Below are positions 6,600 through 51,972 of a stretch of 64,000 bases of DNA, in pieces. Each line of letters begins with the position of its first letter. Within the stretch, counting starts at the first letter, position 1. Source of the DNA: Convolutriloba macropyga. Lineage: Eukaryota. The notes under the pieces were generated by a model. It did no database searches. It was not told the origin of the DNA and worked only from the letters and a program-made list of their open reading frames with translations. The position numbers were made by a program, and so were the translations under genes. The DNA lies in the NCBI RefSeq assembly GCF_964194025.1, contig NC_134476.1, forward strand, positions 27,094,001 to 27,158,000, given 5' to 3'.

Positions 6600-7530
6600 C
6601 TATGTAACTTAAAATTGAACCAGAATTGAGTTTCTCAAAAATCAATAATTCGGGAATTAAATTATTCAAAACCAAAAAATTTTTTTTGCAACCTTCTGAT
6701 TGACTTATTTGCAACCTTCTAATTGATTTCAACAGTTTAGTTTGGCTGAAACGGTTTACAATTGACCCCATAAAACTCTTTGATATCAAAACAACAGAAA
6801 AAACTGTTATCTGAGAAAGACCAACCAATAAAAAATAACAAGACATCTGCTTAATAGTAGTAGTAGTAGTAAAAGACTCAATTCACCTTTCGGGAAGTAC
6901 AAAGGATATAAAAAGACTGCAGTCAGACACATTGACTAATATTTTCCTTCGTTCCCTAGAATTTTCGCCAAATTTGAACATCATGACCGCTATTTGACTA
7001 AAAAAAACCTTCAATAGATTTAAACAATAGACAATTAATCGGCACTAAGACATTATAAAAGCCTGCAACAATTTGCAGGCGTAAATTTTCTGGCCTTTTA
7101 AATTCTCTTGGCTGAGCTGAAACCTTAAGCTGTATCTTTAAAAAATACATTAGGGTTTATACTTTCCGAATTTAAATTTGGCAGAACCAATATAAAGCGG
7201 ATAAGTATTAAATTCTTTCAAAAGAAAAAATTAAGGTTTGTAATTCAACATTGAGACACTTTTTGCAAAAAAATTTTCAATCAATCAAAAAGAAAATAAT
7301 TTCTAAACTTTATTTATCCTCCTATTTTTAGGTTAATACTGAATACTAAATTCTTTGAAGTACTCAGTGTTCAAATGGTGGTACAAATTTTATTAAAAAT
7401 AGGATAATATAATACTTTCTGTTACGAAAAGGGGATAACATTCCTGAACTCAAAAACAACTGCAATAGAAAACAATCGGCCCAGCGTATATTTATAGAAA
7501 AAAATTGACGGAGAAAATTTTAAAAATTCA

Positions 7531-7664
7531 TGTTGTGATAGTCGTTATAAATAATCTACCATTCCTTGTTGTTATTCCTGCATTTGTTTATGTGTTTGAT
7601 ATCGTGTATCTTTCAGAACCAACGTTGAGTTAAAGCTTTACGACAAAGCCTGTTTTCCAATACA
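7531..7664 (+). repeat. 5' LTR (134 bp)
   Basis: TGTTGTGATA...TTCCAATACA; 3 mismatches versus the 3' LTR. Confidence 0.97.
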
Positions 7665-7665
7665 A

Positions 7666-7680
7666 TTTAACTCAACGTTG
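7666..7680 (+). promoter_or_regulatory. Primer-binding site complementary to the element's own LTR (putative self-priming)
   Basis: TTTAACTCAACGTTG is the exact reverse complement of LTR 7620-7634 CAACGTTGAGTTAAA; no TGG tRNA-type PBS after the LTR. Confidence 0.8.
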
Positions 7681-7688
7681 TGAATGCC

Positions 7689-8930
7689 ATGAAGTTCAAG
7701 CCGCCACAACTTCCTTCAAGTCCGACTCCAGAACAATGGCGCAGGTGGAAAGACTGTTTCTCCAAGGGATTGGATATCAACGACATCACAGAAGACGAAC
7801 ACAAACTGACCTTTTTGATTTCGCATGTGGGTTCGGATTTTTTTGCCATTTTGGAACACGCTCCTTCATACAACGAGGCCATTTCCATACTGGACAAGCA
7901 CTTCAAGAAACCCACTAGGATCATATATGCCCGTCATCAGCTCCTCTCATGCCGTCAGAAATCGGATGAGTCTATTTCGGATTTTATCAATAGATTGAAA
8001 ATTCTACTGCAAAAGTGCGAATGCAAAGCCGTCAATATTCAGGAACATCAACAGCTCCTGTTTCGGGACGCCCTCGTTGCGGGCGTGAAATCGGATATCA
8101 ATCGCATGCGACTTCTGGAGCAAACGGACGAAGATGCAACTCTGGAGAATTGCATTTCACTTGCAAGCGCTATTGAACTGTCATCAGACTACAACCAAAG
8201 TTTTCGTGGAACTGAAGGACTGGACTCGTCTGTGCCATCTTCGGAGGCGGCATCAGAGTTGTGCGCCACAGGTCGACCGCCAACTAGTACTGTCAATGAA
8301 GGAGGACAAGTTCGAAATAAATGCCAGTTTTGTGGACTTCGTGGCCATCCGCGACGAAACTGCCCAGCTCGGAACGACAGTTGTCATAAATGCCAAAAGA
8401 AAGGACATTGGGCGACTGCTTGTCGGAGCCAACTGGCAGTAACACAACAAGCTCAGCCAGAAGAGTCATCCATTTCGGCACTGTCGTCGGTACTTCTCGC
8501 GGCCGGAGGAAGCTCCGATGCCTTCTACGCTTTGGTGAAGGTTGGGAAGAAGGAATTTCTCGGACTTGTTGACTCTGGAGCATCGGAGTCATTCATTTCC
8601 TACGAAACTGCACGTCAGTGTGACGGTAAAATAACTATGACAGCATCCGCTACTCAACTTGCAGACAAGACCAAATTACCAATACTTGGCCATATTGATC
8701 TGACGATGCAAGTGAACGCGGAAACCTACTCCATTCGTCTTAAAATTGCCAAGAGTCTTCTTGCAGATATCATAATCGGCATGGATCTTCTCGGGCAACA
8801 CTCAGTTGTACAGCTGGAAGCAAAGGGGGATCGTGGCCCCGTCTCATTCTCGAAAGCAGCTCAGGGCACACACGCTGCAGCTATTTTCCAGCATTGGACA
8901 TTGAACCACCGATTCTCTTCTCAACCATAA
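7689..8930 (+). CDS. gag: Gag + aspartic protease (5' part of gag-pol)
   Basis: Zinc knuckles CQFCGLRGHPRRNC and CHKCQKKGHWATAC; protease LVDSGAS and IIIGMDLL; apparent 1-nt deletion near 8885 shifts the frame from RT. Confidence 0.92.
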   Translation: MKFKPPQLPSSPTPEQWRRWKDCFSKGLDINDITEDEHKLTFLISHVGSDFFAILEHAPSYNEAISILDKHFKKPTRIIYARHQLLSCRQKSDESISDFINRLKILLQKCECKAVNIQEHQQLLFRDALVAGVKSDINRMRLLEQTDEDATLENCISLASAIELSSDYNQSFRGTEGLDSSVPSSEAASELCATGRPPTSTVNEGGQVRNKCQFCGLRGHPRRNCPARNDSCHKCQKKGHWATACRSQLAVTQQAQPEESSISALSSVLLAAGGSSDAFYALVKVGKKEFLGLVDSGASESFISYETARQCDGKITMTASATQLADKTKLPILGHIDLTMQVNAETYSIRLKIAKSLLADIIIGMDLLGQHSVVQLEAKGDRGPVSFSKAAQGTHAAAIFQHWTLNHRFSSQP

Positions 8931-9819
8931 CCAAGCAAAGGGCCAAACCAATCACAACTAAATCTCGCTATGCGAGTAAAGAGAACCAAGAATATCTTAC
9001 TCAAGAGATGGATCGCCTACTAGAAGCTGGCATCATAGAGCCTTCGTCGTCGCCATGGCGGGCCCAAGCAGTTGTGCCCAAGCTGAGGCCTCAACTAATG
9101 GCCCAAGCCTAATTGTTGTGATAAACTTATTAAATAGAACCAACGTTGAGTTAAATTGTAGTGGAAAACAGGCTTTGTCTTAAAGCTTTAACTCAGCTAA
9201 TTGAGGCCCAAGCACGCTCAACTGTAGACAGCAGCATCATCCCTGAGACTTTCGACGAAGACGAGATCATTTGGAAGTACGGGCCTAATTGTCTCCAATC
9301 CCGGAAGTGGAGACAATACTCGACGGAGCTGCACAGGACAAATATTTCTCTCGCGTGGACCTGAAATCTGCCTATCATCAAGTACCTATTCAGGAATCAG
9401 ATCGTTCATTCACAGCCTTCGAAGCAAATGGAGCGTTGTATCAGTTCACTCGACTTGCTTTTGGGCTAACTAACGCAGTTCCTGTTTTTCAACGAGTGAT
9501 CGATTCTATCATTCGCAAGGAGAAGCTAGAAAAGACACGAGCCTATCTGGATGATGTTATTATTTCGGGGGCAACTCAAGAGGAGCATGACCGTAATCTG
9601 GAGAGGTTTATATCAACAGTGAAGAAATACGGAATCACTCTCAACAAAGACAAGTGTCTGTTCAACGTACAACGAATTTCGTTGCTTGGCCATATTCTGG
9701 AAAAGGGTACAAAGCGGCCTGACCCTGAGAGACTCAAGACACTTATGGACTATCCGTTACCGGCCACTAAACAGGAACTCCACAGGCTCATTGGATTCTT
9801 TGCCTACAACGCGAAGTAG
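8894..9819 (+). pseudogene. pol: Reverse transcriptase, disrupted by a deletion/insertion (~9077-9293) and a TAG at 9817
   Basis: GIIEPSSSPWRAQ, VDLKSAYHQ, FTAF, FGLTNA, YLDD motifs; the usual R-x-x-x-D-Y segment is missing and replaced by patchwork DNA; NAK* where W is expected. Confidence 0.92.
9077..9293. other. Templated patchwork insertion in RT built from pieces of the same element
   Basis: 9114-9123 = LTR start; 9136-9155 = LTR 7615-7634; 9156-9195 = reverse complement of the LTR end; 9214-9281 = 11481-11548; joined by reiterated GCCCAAGC/CTAAT fragments. Confidence 0.9.
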
Positions 9820-11562
9820 ATTGCGCATTACTCGGACAAAGTCCAACCGCTCCTGGACGCTTTCAATGCAGGCCTTCTGCCTCTTCCAGAGTCTGCGGTC
9901 AAGGCTATAGGGAAACTGAAAGATGCTATAGCGAGGTCGATTTTGGCTGTTCCTAAATCTGGTTCGCCGCTCATTATGACGACAGACGCTTCAGGAACGG
10001 CGATAAGAGGAACGCTCACGCAAGACTCGCAGCCCATTGCTTTCTTTTCGCGCTCTCTCAGTTCTGGGGAACGTAAACAGTCAGCAGCGGAACGTGAAGC
10101 ATTGGCCATTGTAGAGTGTAGCCGTAAGTGGATGCCATACATGAGAGCTTACCATACCTCGATTCAAACGGACCAAGAGGATGTTGCTTTTATCTTCTCT
10201 CGCAATAAGTCCAAGGTTAAGAATGACAAGCTGATGCGGTGGCGATTAGAACTCTCCACACTGTCATATGGAATCGAGTTTAAGAAGGGGTCAGAGAACA
10301 TCGCAGCGGATGCAATCTCACGCATTGCGTCAATTGATAATTCCGGCACAGTGGACAACCTTCACAGACGCTTGTGCCATCCTGGAATTACAAGAATGTG
10401 GGAGTACGTCAGTCGACACAAATTACCATTTACTTTGAACGAAGTACGACAGTCTTGCTCTGAGTGTCCCACCTGCCTCGAATGGAAGCCTAAGTTCTAC
10501 CGTTCCGAGAAAGCTCATATTATAAAGGCTACTCGGCCGTTCGAACGTATTAGCATTGATTTGGTAGGACCAAAATCAATGTCCCCAGCTGGAAATCGCT
10601 ACCTTCTCACTGTAATTGATGAGTACAGTCGTTTTCCGTTCGCAATACCTTTAAAGGATATTTGTGCACAGTCAGTCATAAGGTCTCTCAAGTCAATCTT
10701 CTCACTTTGTGGAACACCGGGCTTCATTCACTCAGATAGGGGGACACAGTTTATGTCAGCCGACTTCGATAAATTCTGCGCCGATACGGGTATCGCACAC
10801 TCCCGAACCACACCGTATAACCCCAAAGGCAACGGCCAATGTGAGCGCCTTAATGGAACGGTTTGGAAGGGCGTCGTCTGTACACTCCATTCTCGCGGTC
10901 TGCAACCCGATCGGTGGGAAGATATACTGCCTGATGTGCTGGCGTCAATCCGAGCACTCATTTGTACATCTACACAAGAAACAGCTCACGAGCGGTTTTT
11001 TGGTTTCAAACGCAGGGCGCCTGCCAAATGGAATCTCCCTTCATGGCTGGCACCGGGTCACCCCGTGTATGTCAAGAGTTTTGTTCGCAACAAAGGCGAC
11101 CCTATAGTCCAGCCTGCAGAAGTTGTGGAGCCAATAAACAATCAATTTACGAGAATTAGGCGGCGTAATGGAGCAGTCGACACAGTTTCATCGTCCATGT
11201 TATCTCGCGGCAGCGTGGTGCCAAACCCTCGACGAAGATCCTCCCTGCCTCATCCCGTGAATGTCCTGGAAAAGCCACAGGAGGGAAGCGATGTAATAGC
11301 GGATACGTCGATTATGGACAACAATGCGCAAACGCTAGAAACGCTGGCTCCAGGATCGCAGCAAGATGTTTGCATGCCACGTACTGGTGAGGAGTCACCG
11401 CCCGTCATTTCCCAGCCAAGGAAGCCGGCAGGCCAGAGCACTCGTCGCAGTGGAAGAATAAGGCGTCTGCCAGAACGCCTACGCTCAACTGTAGACAGCA
11501 GCATCATCCCTGAGACTTTCGACGAAGACGAGATCATTTGGAAGTACGAGGAGCAACATTAG
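9820..11562 (+). CDS. pol: RT connection, RNase H and integrase (3' part of pol, in frame with RT across the TAG)
   Basis: RNase H TTDASG...EREALA...TDQ; integrase HHCC (HRRLCH...CSECPTC) and D-D-E (SIDLVG, HSDRG, CERLNG). Confidence 0.93.
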   Translation: MAHYSDKVQPLLDAFNAGLLPLPESAVKAIGKLKDAIARSILAVPKSGSPLIMTTDASGTAIRGTLTQDSQPIAFFSRSLSSGERKQSAAEREALAIVECSRKWMPYMRAYHTSIQTDQEDVAFIFSRNKSKVKNDKLMRWRLELSTLSYGIEFKKGSENIAADAISRIASIDNSGTVDNLHRRLCHPGITRMWEYVSRHKLPFTLNEVRQSCSECPTCLEWKPKFYRSEKAHIIKATRPFERISIDLVGPKSMSPAGNRYLLTVIDEYSRFPFAIPLKDICAQSVIRSLKSIFSLCGTPGFIHSDRGTQFMSADFDKFCADTGIAHSRTTPYNPKGNGQCERLNGTVWKGVVCTLHSRGLQPDRWEDILPDVLASIRALICTSTQETAHERFFGFKRRAPAKWNLPSWLAPGHPVYVKSFVRNKGDPIVQPAEVVEPINNQFTRIRRRNGAVDTVSSSMLSRGSVVPNPRRRSSLPHPVNVLEKPQEGSDVIADTSIMDNNAQTLETLAPGSQQDVCMPRTGEESPPVISQPRKPAGQSTRRSGRIRRLPERLRSTVDSSIIPETFDEDEIIWKYEEQH

Positions 11563-11572
11563 CGGGGGAGAA
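11561..11572 (+). promoter_or_regulatory. Polypurine tract
   Basis: AGCGGGGGAGAA immediately before the 3' LTR. Confidence 0.9.
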
Positions 11573-11706
11573 TGTTGTGATAGCCGTTATAAATAATCTA
11601 CCATTCCTTGTTGTTATTCCTGCATTTGTTTATGTGTTTGATATCGTGTATCTTTCAGAACCAACGTTGAGTTAAAGCTTTAAGACAAAGCCTGTTTTCC
11701 ACTACA
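11573..11706 (+). repeat. 3' LTR (134 bp)
   Basis: TGTTGTGATA...TTCCACTACA followed by TSD ATTCA. Confidence 0.97.
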
Positions 11707-12149
11707 ATTCATTTGACACTTTGAATCCTTATTTCTCGAATTTTTATTTGCTTATCACTGAAACAAAGTTTATCGGTTGACTTAGAAAGTAGATTACTCT
11801 CCAATTTCAAATAGATAAAGATAACCGCAATTGACCTGCAATCTTTTAATTAAATTGATCGAAAATAAATGATAAACTCGCTGCAATGAGAGAAAGTGAC
11901 GGCAAGCTCGACAATTGCAATTCAGTACAATTGCACGTATATGTGAACAAGAACTGATTTGAAGTGAGTGATTTCATTTGATGGTAACAATACCAATATC
12001 GATGGCAACATCGACGAAAAAAGAAGGCAAATAATAGCTCCCCACATCTAATAAACAAATTGAGGTCATAAATATAAAGAAGCACAGATTTCCCTGTAAA
12101 ACTTTAAAAGGAGATTTTGAGAAATGAGAAAGCAATAAATCAGATTCAA

Positions 12150-15100
12150 AATTTAGTGTGTTTTGACCGCTCATAGAGATGTCCAGATCGAACCAAAGTT
12201 GACATGGATCAACACCAGTGTACGTAGATTGTAGAAAAAAATAGTCCTTGCTATAGCTTGCCTACGAAGAAATTCAGTTTTTTTGTAAAGAAGCTTGTGA
12301 TTTATTCTAATGATAAACCTTGAATTAAATTATTTTCATCTAGGTCATAGAGTTGTCCAAACTGAATTATACTTCATAAGAAGTATCACCTGTGTACGTG
12401 ACCGTCTAACAGATATTTTGATATAGCTTGCCTGGAAAGAAAATTAATATTTCATAGGTTAATTTCCGATATTTCGAACAATCACTTTTGAAAAATTGCA
12501 TTTTCCAACGGGACAAGTGTCAAAAAGTTCTTCAAATTTATTTGAATTTATGTAGGGTATCCCTTGAGTACGTAGCGTGTAGAACAAAATAAGTTGTGCT
12601 ATATCTTGCCAGGGAATTTTAATTTTGTGTAGGAAAATTTGCCATCTTTCCCAATACTTAGTTTCGAAAAATAGTATTTTTCTGACGGCTGATAGAGTTG
12701 TCCAAATCAAGCTAAATTTGATATGGAGTATCCCTGGGTACGTAAAATGTGGAACAAAATGATTTTTAATTACAGCTTTTTTCGCAAAAAAGTCATTTAT
12801 TTGTGCAAAAATTTGCAAGTTATTCAATCATTCAATTTCTCAATATAGTGTTTTCTGACGGACCATTAGGTTGTTCAAATCAAACTCAAGTTGGCAAGGA
12901 GTATCACCTGTGTACGTACAGAGTAGAATAAAAAATTTTTGTTACAGCTTGCCTAGGGAAAAATTGAGTTTTTTTATACGTATGTTTGCGGTTTACTCGA
13001 TTAATGAATTTGAAGTTGGCAAGGAGTATCACCTGTGTACGTACGGTGTAGAATAAAAAAAAATTTATGGCAGCTTGCCAAGGGAGAAATTGAGTTTTTT
13101 AAACCTATCTTTTCGGTTTATTCGATTAAATAATTTGATAGTTTTTTTTTCTCGGTCATACAGTTTCTAAATTCCAACTAAACTTGGTATGGTGTATCCC
13201 TTGTAAGTATATTGTGGAACTAAAAAACTTTGCTAGAGCTTGCTTTCGAAAAAAAAATATTTTTTTTGTCAAAAATTTGCACCTTTTCGGATATTCAGTT
13301 TCTAAATAAACTATTTTTTTGACGGCTGATAGAGTTGTCTGAATCAAAAGAAATATGATATGGACTTTCCCTGTGTTTGTAAAAAGTGGAACAAAATGTG
13401 TTTTACTATAGGTTACTTTGGGAAAAGATTACTTATTTTTGCAAAATTTTGCGAATTATTCAAATATTTATTTTTTCAAATTTACTGTTGTTGACGGGTC
13501 ATTAGGTTGTTCAAACCAAACTAAAGTTGGCATGGAGTATCACCAGTGTACGTAAAATGTGGAACAAAATGGTTTTTTAGTGTAGCTTTTTTTGGATAAA
13601 AGTCATTTATTTGTACAAAAATTTGCCAGTTATTCGAAAAATTGATGTCATGAAGAACAATAATAATCTTTGCTAGGGCCTGCGTAGTAGGAAACTCAAT
13701 TATTTGAACGGAAGTGTGCGATTTTTTTAAAACAAAATATGTTGAATTAAAATATTTTCCTTCAAGTCATAGAGGTGTCCAAGTCGAAATATACTTGGTA
13801 AGAAGCATCACCTGTGTACGTGATTGTCGAACAGAGATGTTTTGCTATAGCTTCCCTGGGAAGGGCAGAAAGTTAAGATCTCCTAGGCTAATTTCCAATT
13901 ATTTGAATAATCAATTTCTAAATATAGCATTTTCGGACAGGGAAAGTTTGAAATAGTTCTTCTAGTAAAATCAGTTTGTTATAGAGTATCCCATGTGTAC
14001 GTAGAGTGTAGAACATCAAGTATTTTGTTATAGCTTGCCTGGGAAATAATAGTATTTTCTACGAAAATGTGCAATCTTTCCGAATGTTCAGTTTCGAATT
14101 ATAGTACTTTCCTGACGGCTAATAGAGTTGTCCAAAACAATTCAAATTTGATATGGAGTATCCCTGTGTACATTAAATGTAGACCAATTCTTTACTATAG
14201 CTTTCATTGGAAAAAGATTAACTATTTGTGTGAAAATCTGCAAATTATTCGAATAATCAATTCCGAAAGGTAGTGTTTTCTGACCGGTCGTAGAGATGTC
14301 CAGATCAAACCAAAGATAACAGGAATCAACACCATTGTACGCAGATTATAGAACAAAAATAAACCTTGCTATAGCTTGCCTAGGAGGAAGTTCAGTTCTT
14401 TTGTATAGAAGTTTTGGATTTATTCGAATGATAAATCTTGAATTAGAAAACTTTTTCTAGGTCATAGAGTTGTCTAAATTGAATTATACATTATGAGATG
14501 TAACACCTGTTTATGTGATTGTCTAACAGAGATATTTCCCTATAGCTTGCCTGGGAAGAAAATTAATATTTCCTAAGTTAATTTCCGATATTATGAATAC
14601 TCAATTTTGAAAAATCGCATTTTCTAACGGGACAAATGTCAACTAGTTCTTCAAATTTATTTAGGGTATCCCTGGTGTTCGCAACGTGTAGAACAAAATA
14701 AGTTGTGTAATAGCTTGCCTAAAAAAATTTAGTTTTTTTGTACGAAAATTTTTTGCAATCTTTTCAAAAATTTAGTTTTGAAAAATAGTTTTTTTTCTGA
14801 CGGCAAATAGAGTTGTCCATATCAAGCTAAATTTGAGATGGAGTATCCCTGTGTACGTAAAATGTGGAACAAATGGTTTTTAATTATACATTTTTTTTTT
14901 GGAAAAAAGTCATTTGTGCAAAAATTTGCCAGTTATTCGAAAAATCGATGTCGAAATTAGGTGTTTTTTGACAAATCATGAAATTGGTTAAATCGAACCA
15001 AAGTTGGCATGGAGTATCACCTGTGTACGTACAGTGCAGAATAAAAATAAATTTTGTACAGCTTGCTTAGGTAGAAATTGATTTTTTCATCCGTATTTTT

Positions 15101-18100
15101 GTGGTTTATTCGATTGTTTAATTTGGAATGATAGTATTTTTGTCTAGGTCATACGGTTTCTAAATTCCAACTAAACTTGGTGTGGTGTATCCCTTGTAAA
15201 TAGATTGTTGAACTAAAACACTTTGCTATGGCTCGCTTTGGAAAAAAATTAGTTTTTCGCAGAAAAATTTGCACTCTTTCGAATATTCAGTTTCGAAACA
15301 GAGTATTTTTCTGACGGCTGATAGAGTTGTCTAAATCAACACAAGAATGATATGGAGTTTCCCTGTGTTTGTAAAAAGTGGAACAAAACGTGTTTTTTAA
15401 TATAGCTGACTTTGGAAAAAGGTTACTTATATATGCAGAAAATTGCGAATTGTTCAAATAAATAACATTGAAGTATATTGTTGTTTTTGGGTCACTAAAA
15501 TGTTGAAATCGAACCAAAGTTGGCATGGAGTATCACCTGTGTGCGTACACTGTAGAACAAAATCATTTTTGCTATACCTTGCCTAGAAAAAAAAATAGTT
15601 TTTTTACAAAAATTTGTCAAAATCAAGCTAAATTTGATATGGAGTATCCCTGTGTATGTAAAATGTGGAGCAAAATTGGTTTTTTAGTAAAGTTTTTTGT
15701 AAAGAAGACATTTATTTGGGCAAAAATTTGCAGGTTATTTGAATAATCGATGTCGAAATATGGTGTTTTTTGACAAATCATGAAGTTGTTCAAATCGAAC
15801 CAAAGTTGGAATGGAGTATCACCTTTCTGCGTACAGTGAGGAACAAAACAAATTGTGCTATAGCCAGCCTAGGAAAAATATTAGATTTGTACAAAAATTT
15901 GCAGTTTTTTCGAATAATCAGTTTCAAAAATTGGATTTTTCTGACGACTGATAGAGTTGCCCAAATCAAACTAAATTTGATATGAAGTGTCCTGGTGACG
16001 TAAACTGTAGAATAAAGTTGTTTTCTAATATAGCGTTCTTTGGGTTACTCATTTGTGTGAAAACTTGCGAATTGTTTGAACAATCTTTTTTCGAAATATA
16101 GTGCTTTTCGGCCGGTCAAAGAAAAGTCCCAATCGAATCAGAGCTGACACGGAGCAGCGCCAGTGTACGTGTATTGAAGAACGAAAACAATTTTTGCTAG
16201 GGCCCGCATTGTAAAAAATTCAGTTTTTTGAACGGAAAATTGCAATTTTTTCGAACGACACATTTTGAATAAAAATGTTTTCATTCAGGTCAAAGAGTTG
16301 TCAAAATCGAATTATATTTGGTAAGAAGTATCATCGATGTACGTGATCGCCTAACAGAGATAATTTGCTATAGCTTGCCTGGGAAGATAATTGAGATTTC
16401 CTAGCCTAATTTCCGATTGTTCGAAAAATCAATTTTTAAATACAGCTTTTTTTGGACAAGACAAATTTGAAGTAGTTCGTCGAGTCAAATCAATTTGTTA
16501 TAGGGTATCCCTTGTGTACGTAGAGTGTAGAACAAAAAGTGTTTTGCTATAGCTTGCCTAGGAAATATTAATATTTTGTACGAAAATTTGCAATCTTATC
16601 GAATATTCAGTTTCAAAATATAGTACATTTCTGACGGCTAATGGAGTTGTCCCAAACAATTTAAATTTGATATGGAGTATCCCTGTGTACATAAAATGTA
16701 GACCAAGACGTTTTTTTTGTACTATAGTTTTCTTTGAAAAAAGGTTACTTATTTGTGTGAAAATGTGCGAATTGTTCGAATATTGAATTTCGAAAGGTAG
16801 TGTTTTCTGACCAGTCATAGAGGAAGAAATTCAGTTTTTTTGTACAGAAGCTACGATTTATTCGAAAAATAAATTTTCAATTAAAGTATTTTCATCTAGG
16901 TCACCGAGCTGATCAAATCGAATTAAACTTGGTTAGAAGTTTCGTGATTGTCCAAAAACAAGTGATTGTTCGTGTTTTATTTGATTGTCCAAAAGAAAAA
17001 CTTTTTTTGCTTGCTTGGAAAAACTTAATATTTCAGAAGCTAATTTCTGATTATTCGAATAATTAATTTCTAATTATAGCATTTTTGGACATGACAAATT
17101 TGAAATATTTCATCAAACCGAATCAGTCTGCTATAGTTTGCCTAAGACAAAATGGTGCTTTGTACAAAAACCGTCAACTTTTTTTCAAAATTTCGAACTT
17201 CAAATTAAATCAAAATTTGCTGCCAAAATGAACAATGAGAAGGATTGATTGGCTGGATTTGTACAGGTTTTCTATAAGCATTAGGTTTTGAATAATTTCA
17301 AAGGTTTTGTGCAGAGCTACAGATTCAAAAAAAACACAATCAAAACCCGAGCGCTAAACTATCTTGTCGATATCTCCAGCGCTTATTGCTGTCATCTTGT
17401 GCTAATGGTAGTGGTTCTGAAACAGAGAAGTATATTACAGTTGGGTTGATAGAGATTTGGTTGTCTGCAAAATTAAGTATTTATTGGAGTACGATGTGCG
17501 ATGTGGTATTTTGCAAAAAGCAGATGACGTGCAAAGTATTTTTTGGTCTTGATGTAAAAGATTAAGAAGTTACAGTTAAGTTACCACTCGCGTCTGTTCA
17601 AAATAAAATATTTAATCTTCCTTCAAAAGAAACGTGTATTTGTTATGTTTGATTAATTATAAGTGATTGATTTGATCTAATGATAGTTCTACGGGTTTGT
17701 CTGATTAATTGATTAAAGTTTAATTTTATTACAAATTTTTGTCTCGAATTTGTGCATAGGCCTAGGAAAGAACAAACGATTAAGTGGAAAAAAGTTCGTT
17801 TTCAAAAAAACTAATCTCCAAGGTGATAAATTTTTAAAATCAACTGAATTTTGATTTTAATGTCCCACTATGCATGACGGTTCTCAATCATCAAGAAAGT
17901 TTGGCGTAGCTTGGATAGAAAAAAATTAAGTTCGGACATTTTGATTATCCTAGTTTAAGAAGTTTTTAATGGACCAAACAGTTTACCAAAACAATTCCAT
18001 CTCAAGTTCAGAGTTCCGGCTGGCATAAGGCGTCTGAAGCGCCAAAAAAATTTTTTCAGCTTGCCTAGGAAAAACTTACATTTTCGTATGTATATTTGTG

Positions 18101-20900
18101 ATTTACTCGTGTAAGTAGTTTAAAAATAGGTTTTTTTTCGATCAGAACAAGCAATTATCCAAATCCATTCGGCGTCAAAAACAGATCTCTCCTAAGTATA
18201 AGGAATCTATAACGCCAAATATTTTTGACATGGGTTCCCATGGAAAAAATTGGTTTTTCATACGTAAATTTGTGGTTTACTCCAATAAATAATTTTAAAA
18301 ATAGGTTTTTGCGCTCGGACCAATTAATTTCTCAAATCAGTTCAAACTCTTAGACAGATCTCCCCGATGTGCAGCTTCCAGTCTCTGGTATTGCTTGCTT
18401 AGAAAATGTAGTTTTTCTTACGTAATTTTGGACGTTTTGATTTTGTCGTATTTTTAAAACAAGTTTTTCGATCGGTTCAAGCACTTGTCACAGTCGTATC
18501 AGACTAATAGTCCGAATTTGCATTTTTAGAGGGAGTTTAAAACGCAAATAATTTTAATTATAGTTTAAACAGAAAACAGTCAGATTTTGGAGAAAAATTT
18601 GCTCTCTAATCCAATAACTAATTTTGAAATATACTTTCTCACGGTCGAACAATTGTTGAAATCAAACCAAACCGGATATGGTGTATTTCTTGTGTGAGTA
18701 GAATGTAGAACAAAAACAATTTTTGGTATATCTACATTGCCTAGAAAGAAATTTATTTTTTATAGGGAAGTTTGCGATAAAATCCAATAATTATTTTTGA
18801 GATTTAGTAATTTTTGACGGGTCAAAAAGTTGTTCGAATCAATCCAAACTTGGTACTGAGTATCCCCTGTGTAGTAGAGCGCAGAAAAAAACAATTGTTG
18901 CCATATGAAGTACATCTGTTGAGTATCAAACTTTGTAGTATCCCCTATGTGCTTAGAGTAGAATTTAGAAGATAAAAATTTTTTGCCAGGGCTTCCTCAG
19001 GAAAAAAGTTGGGACTTCATAGGTTAATTTCCAATAATTCGAATAATCAATATTGGAAAGTAGCCTTTTCTGACGGGCCAGGGAGGGTGAAATAATTCTT
19101 CAAATCGAACCAAATATGTAGGGAGAAATATTTGGGTACGCAGAAAGTAGAACAAAAAGAATTTGGCTATGACTTGCCTTGTAAAAAAGTTTGTCTTTTT
19201 GTACAAAAACTTGCAGACTTTTTTGAATAATCAGTTTTGAAATATAGAATTGTTCTGATGGCTGATAGAATTGTCCAAATCAAATTTTATTTGATATGGA
19301 ATATTCCCTGTGTACATAATTTATAGAACAAATTGAATTTATTATATTGTTTTATTCTGAAAAAGTTTTGGTCGTTGTGCAAAAATTTGCGAATTATTCG
19401 AATAATCAGTTTTGAAATATAGTAATCTGTGGCGTGTCATAGATTTGTTCAAATCGAACCAAACTTGTTTCAGTTTTTTTGTACGGAAGTTTGCTATTCA
19501 TTCCAACAAAAAATTTTGAGTTCTAATAATTCTGACTGGGTCATAGAGTAGTCCTATTTGAACTAAATTTGCTATAGCTTGCCTAGTTGGGGCTGTTTTT
19601 GTGTGAGCTTTGTTTTGTTAAAAATTGTTATGTTTTGAAGAGCATTTTAGGCCAGGTTTTTCTTTACTTGTTGCTCTGCTCATTTCTCCTTTAGTTTTTT
19701 GGTAACTCGGCCACTGCCAGTTCTAAGCCCGGAATTAAATAGGAGGAGGGTGAAAAAATAATCACTCAGGAAATCCTCATTAGGTCGGTTTTTAGCATGA
19801 CTTTCAGGCTTTCCCGACGCTAAGTTAGCTATATTTTTATAGGGATTTTAAAACGCAAAAAATTATAGGTTTATTTTAACCAAAAACAAGTTAGATTTTG
19901 GAAAAGAATTTACCATCTAATTCAATAATTATCTTTGAAATGCAGTTTCTGACGGGTCGAACAATTGTTGAAATCGAACCAAACCGGGTATGGTGTATTT
20001 CTTGTGTGCTAAGATTATAGAACAAAAACAATTTTTGGTAAATTTGGATTGCCTAGAAATCTATTGAGTTTTTATAGGGAAGTTTGCGATATAATCCAAT
20101 AAATAATTTTGAGATGTAATAATTTGAACTTGTCAAAGAGCTGTTCGAATCAATCCAAATTTTGTATGGAGTATACCCTGTGTACGTAGAACGCAGAACA
20201 AAGCGATTACTGCCATTTGAAGAACATCTGTTGAGTAACAAACTTTGTATTATCCCCTGTGTGCGTAGAGTAGAATTTAGTACAAAAATAGTTTTTAATA
20301 TGGCTTCCTTAGGAAAAAATGGGATTTCATAGGTTAGTTTCCGATTTTTCGAATAATCAATTTTGAAATATAGCCATCTCTTACTGGTCAAGAAGGGTCA
20401 AATCAATCTTTAAAGCAAATCAAATTTGTAAGGAGCAACCCTTGGGTACGCAGAAAGTAGAAAAAAAATGCTATAGCTTGCCTAGGAAAAAAATTTGTAT
20501 TTTTGTACAAAAACTTGCATTCTTTTTCTTTTCAAGTAATCAGTTTTGAATAAAAAAATCGTTCTGATAGGTGATAGAATTGTCCAAAAGAAAATCAAGT
20601 TGATATGGAATATCCCCTGTGTACGTAAGTTATTAAACAAAAGGAATTTTTTATATAGTTTTATTCTGAAAAAGATTTGTTTTTTAAGCAAAACTTTGCG
20701 AATTATTCGAATAATCAATTTTTAAATAGATTAATCTGTGAAAAATCATAGATATTTTTTCAAATCAATAAAACGTGATTCAGTTCTTTTGTATGGAAGT
20801 TTGCTATTTATTCTAACAAATAATATTGAATTGTAGTATTACTGACGGGGTCATAGAGTTGTCCTATTTGAACTAAATTTGCTATAGTTTGCCTACATAG
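12150..20900. repeat. Diverged ~172-bp satellite with higher-order organisation (interrupted ~17200-18050)
   Basis: Recurring TCATAGAGTTGTCCAAATC...GGAGTATC(A/C)CCTGTGTACGT...GCTATAGCTTGCCT at ~170-175-bp spacing (12171, 12345, 12690); closer matches at ~2.0-2.1-kb and ~1.3-kb offsets. Confidence 0.85.
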
Positions 20901-21381
20901 TGTGTTTTTGTGAGAGTTTTTTTTATAACTTTTTATTATTTGGAGATTGTTTTAAGCCAGATTTTTGCTTAACTGTTGCTCTGCTCATTTCTCCATTAGT
21001 TTTTTTTCTAACTCCGCCACTGCCAGTTCTAAGACCTGAATTAAATAGGAGGAGGGTGAAGAAACTGATCATAAAGAAAAATTTCACTAAATTGGTTTTA
21101 AGCAGGAGTTTCAGGCTTGGCCGACGCAAGTTTAGTTTTTTTGTTCAAAAAAGCTCCTCTTGCGACCTATGATCAGGCCATAGTGCGACCATTAATCAGA
21201 TTTTTGTGCCACCAATGATCAAACTATAGTGACCTCTGATCGTAGTGTGACCATTGTCCACAGCATTCTCCAGACTTTGCCCTATGAACAGTGCTTAGTG
21301 CGATCATTTTCCTGACTTTCGTGCGGCCGAAAATAAACTATATTGCGACTTAGCCCTCTCATCTTATATTGCGACTTAGCC

Positions 21382-23563
21382 ATTATGTAAGATTGGCGTT
21401 GAATGCGTTGAATTTATGTAAGATCTACGCTTGAGCGTAGATCTTACATAAATTCAACGCATTCAACGTCAATCTTACATAATTTTGCGTTGAATTTTGG
21501 CGTAGATCTTACATATTTAGCGTTGAATTTTAGCGTAGATCTTACATATTTAGCGTTGAATTTAGGGTAGATCTTACATAAATTCAACGCATTCAACGCC
21601 AATCTTACATATTTTGCGTTGAAATTTGGCGTAGATCTTACATATTTAGCGTTGAATATTAGCGTAGATCTTACATATTTAGCGTTAAATTTAGCGTAGA
21701 TCTTACATGAATTCAACGCATTCAACGCCCATCTTACATAATTTTGCGTTGAATTTTGGCGTAGATCTTACATATTTAGCGTTGAATTTTAGCGTAGATC
21801 TTACATTTTTAGCGTTGAATTTTAGCGTAGATCTTACATATTTAGCGTTGAATTTAGCGTAGATCTTACATAAATTCAACGCATTCAACGACAATCTTAC
21901 ATATTTTGCGTTGAAATTTGGCGTAGATCTTACATATTTAGCGTTGAATTTTAGCGTAGATCTTACATATTTAGCGTTGAATTTTGGCGTAGATCTTACA
22001 TATTAAGCGTTGAATTTTAGCGTAGATCTTACATTCTTAGCGTTGTATTTAGCGTAGATCTCCCATAAATTCAACGCTTTCAACACCAATCTTACATATT
22101 TTGCGTAGAATTTTGGCCGAGATCTTACAAATTTAAGGTTGAATTTTTTGAATTCCATTTCAGACCACTTTATGATTTCAAAAATTTTTCAAGTTTTTTT
22201 TTCGAAAAGTCAATTTTTTCACTGTTTCGACCCCGATACTTCACAGGTGAGAAAAGCGAAGTCAGCAAAAAAACCACTTTTTAGTGCTCTTTTATAGTTC
22301 GAAATCCATTTGAGACCATTTTACGACTTCAGAACTTTTCCAGGTTTTTTTTCGAAAAATCATTTTCCCTGTTTTGACCCCTATGCTGCAAAGGTGAGAA
22401 ACGTGAAATCTGAGAAAAATCATTTTTAGTGCTCTTTTATAGTGCAAAATCCAATTGAATGTTCCAATAAGTTAATTTTTCAAAAAGTTAATTTTTTAAC
22501 TGTTTCGACCCTATACTGCACAGGTGAGAAAAATCACTTTTTAGTGCTCTTTTATAGTGCAAAATCCGTTTCAGACCATTTTACGATTTCAAAACTTTTT
22601 CAAGTTTTTCCTTCGAAAAATTAATTTTTTCACTATTTCGAACCCGATACTCCAAAGGTGAGTAACAGAAAGTCAGAAAAAATCTTTTTTAGTGCTCTTT
22701 TATAGTGCAAAATCCAATTCAAACCATTTGAAGATTTCAAATTTTTCAAGTTTTTTTTCGAAAAATTAATTTTTTACTGTTTCGACCCCTATGATGCACA
22801 ATTGAGAAGAATGAAGTCAGCAAAAAATAACCATATGCTCTCCTACGGTGCAAAAACCATTTCAGACCATTTTGGGAATTCAAATTTTTTTCAAAACTTA
22901 AAAAGAAATTAAACTTTTCCCAGTACTTCTCACATGATAAATGCGTTGAATACGTTGAAATTATGTAAGATCTCGGCTAAATTCAACGAAAAATATGTAA
23001 GATCTAGGCTGAATTCAACAAAATATATGCAAGTTCTACGCTAAATTCAATCCAAAATATGTAACGTCTACGCTAAAATCAACGCAAAATATGTGAGAGC
23101 TACGCTAAATTCAACGCAAAATATGTAAGATCTACGCTTTATAAGGATTGCGGCTCTTAAGGAAACCAAGGTACGGTGGCGCAAGGGTAGAAGAGGTGAC
23201 AAGTAAACAGGAGGTCAGTGGTTCGAGTCCCATACCCAGAGTTCTACGCGTTGATTTTTTGTAAGATCAACGCTAAATTCAACGCAAAAATATGTAAGAT
23301 CTACGCTAAATTCAACGCTAATTATGTAAGATCTACGCTAAATTCGACGCTAAATATGTAAGATCAGCGGCAACTAGCGTTGACAAGTTGGAAAATTCAC
23401 CGCCATTTCTTACATAATTTTGCGCTGAATGCGTTGAATTTTTGTCTTTAAATTCAACGCATTCAACGCAAAATTATGTAGGAAAATTGCGGTGAATTTT
23501 CCGACTTGTCAACGCTAGCTGCCGCTGATCTTATATAATTTTGGCCAAATTCCTCGGCCCGGG
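21382..23563 (-). mobile_element. Foldback-like non-autonomous element made of 32-33-bp repeats (left end not identified)
   Basis: Arrays of AGCGTAGATCTTACATATTTAGCGTTGAATTT(T) in both orientations; ends CCTCGGCCCGGG; inverted homologue of 27957-29611. Confidence 0.65.
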
Positions 23564-26500
23564 GTCTCTGTAGTGTCCCCGAGGTTTCGATGCAGATGAT
23601 GGATCTTTTCGGAAATCAAAACTGATCAACTGATCTTGGTCGTTAAGAAGATTTTAAAATTAGCTTAACTGTCTTCATTTATGTAGCTCCACAGATATTG
23701 ATAGAATTTCAAGAGCTGAAAAGCTAGAGGTTTCTCTCGTCCTGGGGATAATGAGCAAGCTCCACTTGATAATTAGTGGCTAAGGGCAATTTTTGATCTC
23801 GACACCATGACACACATCGGTTCGACGTATCACAGAAAGTCACTTTTTTCTCTTCGCCTCATTTTTGAGTAGAAAATTCTAACAAATATGCAGTTAATGC
23901 GTCACAGTAATTATTTCAAAACGAACACAGAAAACTACAATATTAATAAAATACTAGCGCTAGCAAAGTACATTATCATCAATTATCTTCAACTCAAAAA
24001 TAATTCGCTTCAAATGCAGAATTTTAAGCCATATATCTATACATCTTCTTCAATTTATCAATTAACAATTTCAATTAACTCTGGTTTGTATCTTTTTTCG
24101 TGCTGAAAATACAATCCTGATTATTTCTCAATCAGTTAAAAACAGCTTGTGAATTGCCTCAGCTTCAAATGTCAATGCCGATCAGGAACTCGGTAGCAGA
24201 GCTGATCTGCTCTAGTTGTTTTTTCGGTCTCCAGATTTTGAGATCCTTCAACAACATTACATTACCGGCTGTCAAAATTTTCTCTGTTTTCTGATTTGCA
24301 AAACCTTGTTTTTTAAATTTTCATAGCAGCAGCAATTTGTTTCTAATGAGAATTTTAACTGTGAAGAAGTGACGCCGGAAAAATCAATTTTTTGCTAGTG
24401 AAAATTTGGTATGATGGGCATCAGTATAAAGTTGGGGTTGATAAATTTTTCTCAAAAAAATTTTTCGAGAAAAATTGCGCATCTAGTCTATTATGATACT
24501 TATGAAAAAAGGTTACTTATTTGTGCGAAAATTTGCGAATTATTCGAATAATCGACTTTAAAAACTAGCATCTTCTGACGGGACAAGTGTCAAAAATTGC
24601 GCATCCGAGCCTATTATCATACCCAATTAGCCTAACACCGACAAAAATAATCTTTTAGCTATGTCGTGACTTATTAATCCGTGACGCAGTAATTTTGTTC
24701 GGTTAACTAGCAGGTAGACAATAGCATGCTTAATAAATTTCGAACCTTTCACAAACCTCTGGAAGATTATACGTGCACCCGGGCCGAGGAAATTGGCCAA
24801 AATCATGTAAGATCAGCGGCAACTAGCGTTGAAAAGTCGGAAAATTCACCGCAATTTTCTTACATAATTTTGCGTTGAATGTGTTGAATTCGAAGACAAA
24901 AATTCAACGCATTCAACGCAAAATTATGTAAGAAAATTGCGGTTAATTTTCCGACTTGTCAACTCTAGTTGCCGCTGATCTTACATATGTAGCGGTGAAT
25001 GTAGCGTAGATCTTACATAATTAGCGTTGAATTTAGCGTAGATCTTACATATTTTAGCGTTGAATTTAGCGTTGGTCTTACATAATTAGCGTTGAATTTA
25101 GCGTAGATCTTACATATTTAGCGTTGAATTTAGCGTAGATCTTACATAATTAGCGTTGAATTTAGCGTAGATCTTACATATTTTAGCGTTGAATTTAGCG
25201 TTGGTCTTACATTCTTAGCGTTGAATTTAGCGTAGATCTCCCATAAATTCAACGCTTTCAACACCAATCTTACATATTTTGCGTAGAATTTTGCCGAGAT
25301 CTTACAAATTTAAGGTTGAATTTTTTGAATTCCATTTCAGACCACCTAATGATTTCAAAAATTTTTCAAGTTTTTTTTTCGAAAAGTCAATTTTTTCACT
25401 GTTTCGACCCCGATACTTCACAGGTGAGAAAAGCGAAGTCAGCAAAAAAACCACTTTTTAGTGCTCTTTTATAGTTCGAAATCCATTTGAGACCATTTTA
25501 CGACTTCAGAACTTTTCCAGGTTTTTTTTTTCGAAAAATCATTTTCCCTGTTTCGACCCCTATGCTGCAATGGTGAGAAACGTGAAATCTGAGAAAAATC
25601 ATTTTTAGTGCTCTTTTATAGTGCAAAATCCAATTGAATGTTCCAATAAGTTAATTTTTCAAAAAGTTAATTTTTTAACTGTTTCGACCCTATACTGCAC
25701 AGGTGAGAAAAATCACTTTTTAGTGCTCTTTTATAGTGCAAAATCCGTTTCAGACCATTTTACGATTTCAAAACTTTTTCAAGTTTTTCTTTCGAAAAAT
25801 TAATTTTTTCACTATTTCGAACCCGATACTCCAAAGGTGAGTAACAGAAAGTCAGAAAAAATCTTTTTTAGTGCTCTTTTATAGTGCAAAATCCAATTCA
25901 AACCATTTGAAGATTTCAAATTTTTCAAGTTTTTTTTCGAAAAATTAATTTTTTACTGTTTCGACCCCTATGATGCACAATTGAGAAGAATGAAGTCAGC
26001 AAAAAATAACCATATGCTCTCCTACGGTGCAAAAACCATTTCAGACCATTTTGGGAATTCAAATTTTTTTCAAAACTTAAAAAGAAATTAAACTTTTCCC
26101 AGTACTTCTCACATGATAAATGCGTTGAATACGTTGAAATTATGTAAGATCTCGGCTAAATTCAACGAAAAATATGTAAGATCTAGGCTGAATTCAACAA
26201 AATATATGCAAGTTCTACGCTAAATTCAATCCAAAATATGTAACGTCTACGCTAAAATCAACGCAAAATATGTGAGAGCTACGCTAAATTCAACGCAAAA
26301 TATGTAAGATCTACGCTTTATAAGGATTGCGGCTCTTAAGGAAACCAAGGTACGGTGGCGCAAAGGTAGAAGAGGTGACAAGTAAACAGGAGGTCAGTGG
26401 TTCGAGTCCCATACCCAGAGTTCTACGCGTTGATTTTTTGTAAGATCAACGCTAAATTCAACGCAAAAATATGTAAGATCTACGCTAAATTCAACGCTAA

Positions 26501-47134: not shown

Positions 47135-47189
47135 GTTTTAACAGTTGCTTGTATTCTTTGCTAAATTCTCCCTCACGCGACAACATTTG

Positions 47190-47350: not shown

Positions 47351-47473
47351 CTCTTTCTTGAAGATAATTCATTCATTTGTTGCTTTTCGTTTTCAATATT
47401 AAGTTAGCTTATTTATTCAATTCTTCCTTTCTTGCTTTAAAAACTCATCTTTTACTTACTTCACACGCCACAG

Positions 47474-51971: not shown

Positions 51972-51972
51972 C

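What the first reader, a model, noticed from the sequence alone, without database searches (positions are those of the whole stretch)
7611..7680. tRNA-independent, self-priming PBS in a Mag-like Gypsy element
Seen: one base after the 5' LTR comes TTTAACTCAACGTTG, a perfect 15-nt inverted copy of LTR 7620-7634, with a 31-nt loop; there is no TGG-type tRNA PBS. An Inr-like TCAG places a plausible +1 at A7615, so transcript nt 6-20 would fold back onto the PBS. Established: S. pombe Tf1 primes from its own transcript 5' end released by RNase H. Inference: this element, which looks Mag-like rather than chromoviral, uses an analogous mechanism, possibly evolved independently and with a longer (~20-nt) primer. 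I cannot tell whether this lineage has already been described.
Basis: partly seen in the sequence, partly recalled or inferred. Interest (0 to 1): 0.85.

Follow-up and report, generated by a model that had tools for sequence, protein, structure and literature searches.

The report
Self-priming compact Gypsy retrotransposon clade
A small jumping gene in this animal genome, and its relatives in insects, a nematode and a sea anemone, carries in place of the usual tRNA docking site a stretch that pairs perfectly with its own end repeat, so it most likely starts copying itself with a piece of its own RNA.

Summary
Window 7620-7634 and 7666-7680 are a perfect 15-nt inverted repeat with a 31-nt loop. 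The second arm starts one base after the 134-bp 5' LTR of a 4.2-kb single-ORF Ty3/gypsy element (7531-11706, TSD ATTCA).

No tRNA fits the site. The 15-mer occurs 45 times in the 1.18-Gb genome. Of these, 43 lie in this family and 2 are chance sites that are not tRNA genes.

The decisive evidence is comparative. Thirteen elements were examined, from at least four families in this genome, two unnamed public contigs, and Maniola, Ischnura, Macrosiphum, Nesidiocoris, Trichuris and Actinostola. All share one layout: LTR end, one A, then 12-19 nt that are the reverse complement of an LTR segment ending in the AAUAAA-like hexamer.
- 97% of cells are Watson-Crick over 12 positions.
- 9 of 12 positions show compensatory double changes.
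- No core G:U pairs occur.
- A small hairpin stacked on the LTR arm also covaries.

The best reading is Tf1-like self-priming in a non-chromodomain, Mag-like clade. Published Mag-lineage mosquito elements have TGG-type tRNA sites instead.

The transcription start, the RNase H cut and the exact clade name remain inferred. I found no paper describing this. First readers of this scan noted the same geometry in at least seven other windows of this genome.

The parts
7526..7530 (+). 5' target-site duplication ATTCA
   Evidence: Same 5 bases at 11707-11711.
7531..7664 (+). 5' LTR, 134 bp, TGTTG...ACA
   Evidence: Aligns to 11573-11706 with 3 differences. The boundaries are confirmed by the TSDs of nine of ten other copies.
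7613..7617 (+). Initiator-like TCAGA; proposed +1 at A7615 (inferred)
   Evidence: TCAG lies 0-14 nt upstream of, or at, the arm start in about 7 of 12 families. Sense homology in two rearranged copies begins at A7615. There are no RNA data.
7620..7634 (+). LTR arm (proposed primer 3' part), ending in the poly(A)-signal-like AGUUAAA
   Evidence: Perfect complement of 7666-7680. It covaries with the PBS across 13 elements.
7635..7649 (+). Small hairpin GCUUU-ACGAC-AAAGC stacked on the arm
   Evidence: Present in the MFE fold. Equivalent stems with different sequences occur in relatives: GCUUGA/UCAAGC, ACCAA/UUGGU, GCCUG/CGGGC.
7650..7664 (+). U-rich tail of the LTR (likely poly(A) downstream element / U5), inferred
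   Evidence: Read from the sequence. The role is assigned from general knowledge of poly(A) sites.
7665..7665 (+). Single spacer A between LTR and PBS
   Evidence: An A at this place in all 13 elements.
7666..7680 (+). Primer-binding site, complementary to the element's own LTR arm
   Evidence: The 15-mer is absent from host tRNA genes.
7689..11562 (+). gag-PR-RT-RNaseH-IN reading frame, broken in this copy (three pieces, plus a mosaic insertion)
   Evidence: ORFs and Pfam hits. One other copy has 1162 aa uninterrupted, with the same domain order and no chromodomain.
9077..9298 (+). 222-nt mosaic replacing 82 nt of RT. 9114-9123 = LTR nt 1-10; 9136-9155 = sense 7615-7634; 9156-9195 = antisense of 7665-7626; 9214-9281 = copy of 11481-11548.
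   Evidence: Comparison with another copy and with the element itself. The junction motif occurs only twice in the genome.
11564..11572 (+). Polypurine tract GGGGGAGAA
   Evidence: Abuts the 3' LTR. Similar tracts are found in relatives.
11573..11706 (+). 3' LTR (its copy of the arm is at 11662-11676)
11707..11711 (+). 3' target-site duplication ATTCA

Best explanation
The element belongs to a metazoan-wide clade of compact (about 4 kb), single-ORF, chromodomain-less Ty3/gypsy retrotransposons. These elements prime minus-strand DNA synthesis with their own RNA rather than with a tRNA.

Proposed cycle (only the pairing and its conservation are shown; every later step is inferred by analogy with Tf1):
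1. Transcription starts a few bases upstream of the arm, near A7615.
2. The first roughly 20 nt of the RNA fold back. Nt 7620-7634, which end in the AAUAAA-like hexamer, pair with the PBS 7666-7680. A small hairpin (7635-7649) stacks on this duplex.
3. The element's RNase H cuts after A7634.
4. The new 3'-OH is extended across the spacer A and the 30 nt of R/U5 to give a very short strong-stop DNA.
5. That DNA transfers to the 3' R.
6. Plus-strand synthesis later copies the RNA primer, so the PBS is rewritten from the arm in every cycle.

The same duplex would hide the poly(A) signal in the 5' copy of R but not in the 3' copy.
For: Shown:
- The inverted repeat is perfect and sits exactly where a PBS must be, one base after the LTR.
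- All 13 elements examined have the same geometry with different sequences. They include four families in this genome and elements from Lepidoptera, Odonata, two Hemiptera, a nematode and a cnidarian. Stems are 12-19 bp and loops 24-52 nt.
- Over 12 positions, 97.4% of cells are Watson-Crick and 9 positions carry compensatory double changes. Column permutation reaches 71% at most, and slid registers 39% at most.
- Mismatches occur only in decayed copies. No G:U pair occurs in the cores. This fits templated copying of the primer better than selection on RNA structure alone.
- There is no TGG. The 15-mer complement occurs only in this family plus 2 chance sites that are not tRNA genes. There is no Rfam or tRNA hit.
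- The leader is only 24 nt, which leaves no room for another PBS.
- The RNase H catalytic residues are conserved (invariant or nearly so) in 25 homologues.
- Two rearranged copies join the sense sequence AGAAC+arm directly to antisense U5, the junction predicted for a self-primed strong-stop DNA.

Established background: Tf1 primes this way, and self-priming is predicted for sushi, Tcn1 and TAR elements (PMC6317226, PMC6934838).
Against: - There are no RNA or cDNA data. No RNA run exists for this host, so the transcription start, the cut and the primer length are unproven.
- If transcription starts at A7615, the primer carries a 5-nt unpaired 5' flap (0-7 nt in relatives). If copied, this flap would mismatch at the second strand transfer. 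Tf1 has no such flap.
- In Actinostola and Maniola the TCAG lies inside the arm.
- After the cut, R would offer only about 14 nt of homology for the first transfer.
- The snap-back junction is sequence-identical to the reverse complement of the normal U5-PBS junction except for the 5 nt AGAAC. It could therefore also come from rearrangement mediated by the inverted repeat.
- The duplex could additionally, or instead, serve to occlude the poly(A) signal.
Confidence: 0.75

Rival explanations
1. The arm-PBS duplex is only a regulatory RNA structure. It would occlude the promoter-proximal poly(A) signal, or serve as a packaging or dimerisation signal. Reverse transcription would then be primed by some other, unidentified host RNA.
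For: The LTR arm always ends in the AAUAAA-like hexamer. Hiding that signal in the 5' R but not in the 3' R is a known need of retroelements with short R regions (general knowledge; HIV-1 poly(A) hairpin). The fold is stable.
Against: The paired segment occupies the PBS position exactly, one base after the LTR, and the leader has no room for another site. The PBS differs between families in the same genome, so a common host primer is excluded. There is no tRNA match. The absence of G:U pairs and the perfect stems fit templated copying. Occlusion and priming are not mutually exclusive.
Confidence: 0.1
2. Self-derived priming with a different donor. The primer would be the arm in the 3' R of the same RNA, or the arm of a co-packaged RNA, used in trans. 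It would not be the folded-back 5' end.
For: Both R copies carry the arm. A family-B locus (L062, positions 1849-2472) has a full sense LTR plus PBS that continues directly as antisense flap-U3-PPT-pol. This is expected if a long plus-sense strand ending at the arm had been extended from a PBS.
Against: Cutting the 3' R would remove the homology needed for the first strand transfer. The L062 structure can also be explained by recombination between the inverted repeats. In Tf1, priming is known to be intramolecular from the 5' end (literature knowledge).
Confidence: 0.1
3. Chance complementarity, or an assembly or annotation artefact.
For: None beyond the small size of the feature.
Against: 0 of 2000 shuffles reach the observed pairing. 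The feature is present in about 13 independent genomic copies. It is conserved with covariation across phyla.
Confidence: 0.01

Closest known systems
Tf1/Tf2 of Schizosaccharomyces pombe (experimentally shown self-priming), with sushi-ichi, Maggy, Skippy, Cft-1, Boty and plant Tcn1 (predicted)
   Same: There is no tRNA PBS. The PBS next to the 5' LTR is complementary to the element's own R region. A stem-loop adjoins the primer duplex. The RNase H domain is intact. The mechanism inferred here is the same kind.
   Different: This is a different lineage: it has no chromodomain, and RT-RNase H identity to Tf2 is 23-24% against 27-31% to insect non-chromoviral elements. The duplex is longer (12-19 bp against 11). 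The arm ends in the poly(A) hexamer and may start a few bases inside the RNA rather than at nt 1. The LTRs are far shorter (110-190 bp) and the predicted strong-stop DNA is only about 25-50 nt.
Mag lineage of Ty3/gypsy (Mag, Jule, SURL / 'Mag C'; mosquito cqgypsy_9, _37, _38)
   Same: The elements are compact with short LTRs, often a single gag-pol ORF and a 5-bp TSD. The LTR layout is AATAAAAGCT ... ACA followed by one or a few spacer bases (one A in cqgypsy_9; PMC3286476 table and File S1). The LTR end motifs are like those given for Mag C in PMC3601003. The host range spans Metazoa.
   Different: The published mosquito Mag elements carry TGG-type sites assigned to tRNA-Ser or tRNA-Leu. Here the site is complementary to the LTR itself. 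Membership was not tested with reference sequences.
TAR / Houba / Osr-1 Ty1/copia elements of plants (predicted self-priming)
   Same: A tRNA-independent PBS complementary to the element's own LTR transcript is predicted from sequence (PMC6317226).
   Different: They belong to a different superfamily (IN before RT) and have plant hosts.
Retroviral 5' poly(A)-signal hairpins (HIV-1) and U5-IR / U5-leader stems
   Same: The AAUAAA in the 5' R is sequestered in a helix, and a stem-loop lies next to the primer duplex.
   Different: In retroviruses the PBS itself binds a tRNA and the helices flank it. Here the PBS is one strand of the helix. This comparison comes from general knowledge and was not tested.

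Membership tests
Ty3/gypsy (Metaviridae) LTR retrotransposon | Two LTRs with TG..CA ends, a short TSD and a polypurine tract | tested here: met
   134-bp LTRs, a 5-bp TSD in 10 of 11 copies, and GGGGGAGAA before the 3' LTR.
Ty3/gypsy (Metaviridae) LTR retrotransposon | Domain order gag-PR-RT-RNaseH-IN | tested here: met
   Pfam on a 1162-aa uninterrupted frame gives gag/PNMA, Asp protease, RVT_1, RT_RNaseH and rve in that order. The closest solved structure is Ty3 (E = 8e-59).
Tf1-type self-priming (mechanism) | No PBS complementary to a tRNA | tested here: met
   No TGG follows the LTR. The 15-mer complement is found only in this family plus 2 chance sites that are not tRNA genes. No tRNA or Rfam hit.
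Tf1-type self-priming (mechanism) | The PBS next to the 5' LTR is complementary to the element's own R region, and this is conserved among relatives | tested here: met
   13 of 13 elements; 97.4% Watson-Crick; 9 of 12 positions with compensatory changes.
Tf1-type self-priming (mechanism) | The complementary segment is the very 5' end of the mRNA | tested here: inconclusive
   No RNA runs. An initiator-like TCAG lies 0-14 nt upstream in about 7 of 12 families. Two rearranged copies show sense homology starting at A7615, 5 nt before the arm.
Tf1-type self-priming (mechanism) | RNase H of the element cuts the RNA duplex to release the primer | not testable with these tools
   Only the conservation of the RNase H catalytic residues could be seen.
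Tf1-type self-priming (mechanism) | A stem-loop adjoining the primer-PBS duplex (U5-IR-like) | tested here: met
   A 3-6-bp hairpin directly 3' of the arm is predicted in most of the folded elements (9 of 11), with covarying stems. Equivalence to the Tf1 structure is an inference.
Tf1/sushi chromovirus clade (phylogenetic membership) | Chromodomain at the integrase C-terminus (most members), and closest relatives among Tf1/Tf2/sushi | tested here: not met
   No chromodomain in the query or in the Pfam lists of 120 homologues. RT-RNase H identity is 23-24% to Tf2 and 18-21% to RTL1, against 27-31% to opus, gypsy, 297, 17.6 and 412. This is a rough measure, not a tree.
Mag lineage (Mag A/B/C, incl. 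SURL, Jule) | Placement with Mag reference RT/RH/IN sequences in a tree | not tested
   No reference sequences could be brought into the tools. The alignment in PMC3286476 File S2 could only be read.
Mag lineage (Mag A/B/C, incl. SURL, Jule) | Compact element, short LTRs, often a single ORF, 5-bp TSD, LTR ends like TGTNATRT...AYANAACA | tested here: met
   About 4.03 kb, 110-190-bp LTRs and one ORF of about 1250 aa. L043 starts TGTTATAT and ends ATACAACA, matching the Mag C motifs in PMC3601003.
Mag lineage (Mag A/B/C, incl. SURL, Jule) | PBS complementary to tRNA-Ser or tRNA-Leu (as published for mosquito members) | tested here: not met
   cqgypsy_9, _37 and _38 show TGGC.ACGA-type sites. None of the 13 elements here does.

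The most novel reading that the evidence does not exclude
An ancient clade of compact, Mag-like Ty3/gypsy elements, shared by cnidarians and bilaterians, gave up tRNA priming independently of Tf1/sushi. The same 12-19-bp helix would do two jobs. It hides the 5' poly(A) signal, and after an RNase H cut right behind the AAUAAA hexamer it supplies the primer. The PBS is rewritten from R in each cycle, which would explain the perfect Watson-Crick stems without wobble pairs. Rare mis-jumps of the flap-bearing strong-stop DNA would leave the snap-back fossils seen in this genome.
Probability: 0.45. Interest if true: 0.75.

Novelty: new variant of a known kind. Interest (0 to 1): 0.66.

Why it matters
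Self-priming has been shown by experiment only for Tf1. Beyond that it has been predicted for the Tf1/sushi group, plant Tcn1 and some plant copia lineages.

If the reading holds, a second, unrelated and very widespread animal lineage uses the same trick. It occurs in insects, nematodes and cnidarians, and protein hits suggest sharks and rays as well.
- The helix that yields the primer would also mask the poly(A) signal.
- The findings bear on how often tRNA priming was lost during retroelement evolution.
- They also bear on how RNase H can cut RNA duplexes.
- LTR-finding software that demands a tRNA-complementary PBS will mis-score or mis-assign this clade. Published tables assign tRNA-Ser or tRNA-Leu to architecturally similar elements.
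- The short, well-defined RNA of about 75 nt makes the mechanism directly testable in vitro.

Tried and rejected
- **Covariation inside the family:** about 13 copies are 96-99% identical with invariant arms, so they are uninformative.
- **RNA evidence for the start site:** no RNA run is on record for this organism, and read laying was therefore not used.
- **tRNA priming:** rejected. Rfam gave nothing.
- **Loci that gave no usable 5' end:** L044 is cut at the contig end. L061 and L056 are decayed family-C copies.
- **Alignment for the count of structure pairs:** MAFFT (A2) put the arms of some rows one column out of register. Pair counts and controls were instead computed in an anchored register by script.
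- **Spacer in the two snap-back copies:** the 11-12-nt spacer (AACTTA[A/T]TAA[A]T) between LTR nt 1-10 and A7615 has no other match in the element or genome. It may be a diverged remnant of U3 nt 11-25 and remains unexplained.
- **RT tree with named references:** a tree with Mag, SURL, Tf1 and sushi could not be built, because the only reference alignment found is text in a paper supplement. A Foldseek comparison with reviewed proteins was used as a rough substitute.
- **Literature:** seven full-text searches found no description of self-priming in this clade. Subscription journals are not covered.

Full report
**1. The observation**

The repeat finder reports arms 7620-7634 (CAACGTTGAGTTAAA) and 7666-7680 (TTTAACTCAACGTTG), 15 nt, 100% complementary, 31 nt apart.

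The element is 7531-11706.
- The two LTRs are 134 bp (7531-7664 and 11573-11706), with TG..CA ends and 3 differences.
- The target-site duplication is ATTCA.
- A polypurine tract GGGGGAGAA abuts the 3' LTR.

A search of the whole 1.18-Gb genome found about 13 full copies at 96-99% identity. Typical length is 4024-4043 bp. Of ten fetched, nine have their own 5-bp duplication. This fixes the LTR end at CA7664, so one spacer A (7665) precedes the second arm and no TGG follows.

The coding region reads gag/PNMA-like, aspartic protease, RT, RNase H, integrase in a single frame, with no chromodomain. Every copy examined carries at least one frame break.

Chance is excluded. None of 2000 shuffles of the 25 nt after the LTR pairs as well. 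The RNA 7615-7690 folds at -21.3 kcal/mol, z = -4.85.

**2. Is it a tRNA site?**

No.
- The 15-mer occurs 45 times in the genome. Of these, 43 are LTR arms or PBSs of this family, including the copy inside the window's own insertion.
- The other two are isolated chance sites with no tRNA gene. The reversed control pattern gave 3-4 hits per strand.
- ARAGORN finds no tRNA in the window, and Rfam finds nothing in 7400-7800.

**3. Relatives**

Within the family both arms are invariant, so I looked further out. A protein search found about 1450 homologues. Most are about 1200 aa, sit on contigs of about 3.7-4.4 kb, and show 45-66% identity. Hosts include insects, Trichuris and Trichinella, a sea anemone, and sharks and rays. 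A search of the window's own genome found three more families at 41-54% identity.

I recovered LTR-PBS junctions for 13 elements:

| Element | Stem (bp) |
|---|---|
| The window | 15 |
| L043, unnamed ENA contig, 66% aa identity | 14 |
| L057, own genome | 15 |
| Family B, own genome | 13 |
| Family C, own genome, two decayed copies | 13, with mismatches |
| L065, Logan contig | 17 |
| Maniola jurtina | 13 |
| Ischnura elegans | 16 |
| Actinostola | 13 |
| Trichuris suis | 16 (perfect against its 3' LTR) |
| Macrosiphum euphorbiae | 19 |
| Nesidiocoris tenuis | 12 |

Every one has the same plan: LTR end, one A, then a segment beginning TTT(A/T) that is the reverse complement of an LTR segment ending in A(A/G/T)U(A/U)AAA. 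Loops are 24-52 nt.

In a register anchored at the spacer:
- 97.4% of 156 cells are Watson-Crick.
- 9 of 12 positions show compensatory double changes.
- Permuting the PBS letters among elements gives 60% on average and 71% at most (0 of 2000 reach the observed value).
- Sliding the partner by 1-3 positions gives at most 39%.

The few mismatches lie in decayed copies. No G:U pair occurs in the cores.

A small hairpin directly 3' of the arm is predicted in most families, with different, compensating stems. It is GCUUU/AAAGC in the window at 7635-7649. Elsewhere it is GCUUGA/UCAAGC, ACCAA/UUGGU or GCCUG/CGGGC.

**4. What it most likely does**

In an LTR element the minus-strand primer must sit directly next to U5. 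Here the leader from LTR end to the gag ATG (7689) is only 24 nt and holds nothing else.

Four families in one genome have four different sites, each matching its own LTR. A shared host primer is therefore excluded, and the primer must come from the element. This is the logic of Tf1 self-priming. That mechanism is shown by experiment for Tf1 and predicted for sushi, Tcn1 and some copia lineages (PMC6317226, PMC6934838).

I infer the following sequence of events:
- The 5' end of the RNA folds back.
- RNase H cuts after the last A of the hexamer. The catalytic residues are conserved in 25 homologues.
- The 3'-OH is extended over the spacer and about 30 nt of R/U5.

Because plus-strand synthesis copies the primer, the PBS is rewritten from the arm in each generation. 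That would explain perfect stems without wobble pairs and the easy co-variation.

The same helix would mask the poly(A) signal in the 5' R only. This may be a second function, and it is also the main rival reading.

**5. The start site**

There are no RNA runs for this organism. Indirect hints are as follows.
- TCAG lies 0-14 nt upstream of the arm, or at its start, in about 7 of 12 families.
- In Maniola the arm begins TCAGTT. A start at that A would give exactly 11 paired bases.
- In Actinostola, however, the TCAG lies inside the arm.

Two rearranged copies in this genome add a hint.
- **The window copy.** A 222-nt mosaic (9077-9298) has replaced 82 nt of RT. It contains LTR nt 1-10, a 12-nt spacer, then AGAAC+arm in sense (identical to 7615-7634). 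This is joined directly to the antisense of 7665-7626, followed by a sense copy of the pol 3' end.
- **A copy on another chromosome (L036).** Inside its target-site duplication it carries an extra left end with the same order of pieces.
- The junction motif occurs only at these two places in the genome.

Sense R from A7615 to the arm end, joined to antisense U5, is what a self-primed strong-stop DNA with its primer copied into DNA would look like. Both outer boundaries (LTR nt 1 and A7615) are natural ends of replication intermediates.

The caveat is that only the 5 nt AGAAC distinguish the junction from the plain reverse complement of U5-PBS. In addition, a family-B locus (L062) shows a long fold-back around the same axis, which recombination between the inverted repeats could also produce. 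I count these fossils as weak support.

**6. Which lineage**

- The closest solved structure is Ty3.
- A model of RT-RNase H (pLDDT 86) was compared with reviewed proteins. Identity is 31% to opus, 28% to gypsy, 297 and 17.6, 27% to 412, 26% to Ty3, 23-24% to Tf2 and 18-21% to RTL1.
- With the missing chromodomain, this argues against membership in the Tf1/sushi group.
- The architecture fits published descriptions of the Mag lineage, especially Mag C (PMC3601003, PMC3286476). It is about 4 kb with 110-190-bp LTRs, one ORF, a 5-bp duplication, and LTR ends such as TGTTATAT...ATACAACA.
- Mosquito Mag elements printed in File S1 of PMC3286476 have a very similar LTR tail (AATAAAAGCT ... ACA followed by one or a few spacer bases). 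It is followed, however, by TGGC.ACGA-type sites assigned to tRNA-Ser or tRNA-Leu.

So the clade here looks like a Mag-like branch that swapped primer type. I could not build a tree with reference sequences.

**7. Novelty**

Seven full-text searches found no description of self-priming in this clade. Subscription literature is not covered.

First readers of this scan noted the same geometry in at least seven other windows of this genome, so it is a recurrent feature here and not a one-off.

I rate it a new variant of a known kind. The mechanism is known from Tf1. What appears new is the lineage, the overlap with the poly(A) signal, the longer duplex, the possible 5' flap and the very short strong-stop.

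Noticed in passing
window 9077-9298: A 222-nt mosaic replaces 82 nt of the RT region of this copy. The pieces in order are: LTR nt 1-10, a 12-nt spacer of unknown origin, sense 7615-7634 joined to antisense 7665-7626, then a sense duplicate of 11481-11548 (pol 3' end). It looks like a product of several template switches during reverse transcription.
   Followed up: partly
L036 (G000:C15:14928945-14933405, element on minus strand), 66 nt upstream of its 5' LTR: Inside the GATAC target-site duplication the copy carries an extra left end. Its pieces are LTR nt 1-10, an 11-nt spacer, AGAAC+arm in sense, 18 nt of antisense U5 and CCAA, followed by the normal LTR. The order of pieces is the same as in the window's mosaic. 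The junction motif occurs only at these two places in the genome.
   Followed up: partly
L062 (G000:C4112:26000-31284), 1849-2472: A family-B copy has a complete 5' LTR plus PBS that runs straight into the antisense of flap-U3-PPT and about 400 nt of the pol 3' end. This is a long fold-back whose axis is the R/U5 loop between the arm and the PBS.
   Followed up: partly
L055:3316-3903 (family B, own genome): Family B has about 750 nt between the PBS and gag. This region holds an extra upstream ORF of about 196 aa with a weak GDSL/SGNH-hydrolase match (Lipase_GDSL_2, E = 6e-5, below Pfam's cut-off) and a GGND motif. The region is conserved in five copies.
   Followed up: partly
window 46274-56812 and 58134-61772: A cluster of plus-strand ORFs includes one with a Pox_A32-type packaging ATPase match (51973-52713, E = 1e-8) and two equal-length 206-aa ORFs about 3 kb apart. 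Next to it lies a 1212-aa minus-strand ORF with C2H2 fingers and a weak DUF559 match. This may be a Polinton/Maverick-like element.
   Followed up: no
window 12100-29500: There are large arrays of diverged tandem and interspersed repeats. Units are about 130, 32-33, 640-790 and 3179 nt, and some pairs are 99% identical. The arrays begin a few hundred bases downstream of the element.
   Followed up: no
L041 (G000:C6:27361729-27370144) and L042 (G000:C12:6322670-6332669): L041 holds three LTRs about 3.9 kb apart, meaning two copies in tandem sharing the middle LTR. L042 holds a truncated LTR (nt 1-60), a second partial one (nt 58-134) and a full one. Both are rearranged or nested copies of the same family.
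   Followed up: no
L069 (Trichuris suis), LTRs 2292-2481 and 7877-8066: The PBS matches the arm of the 3' LTR perfectly (16 of 16), but the 5' LTR arm has one G-to-A change. The called gene (1551 aa) fuses this element with extra RT and integrase pieces.
   Followed up: no
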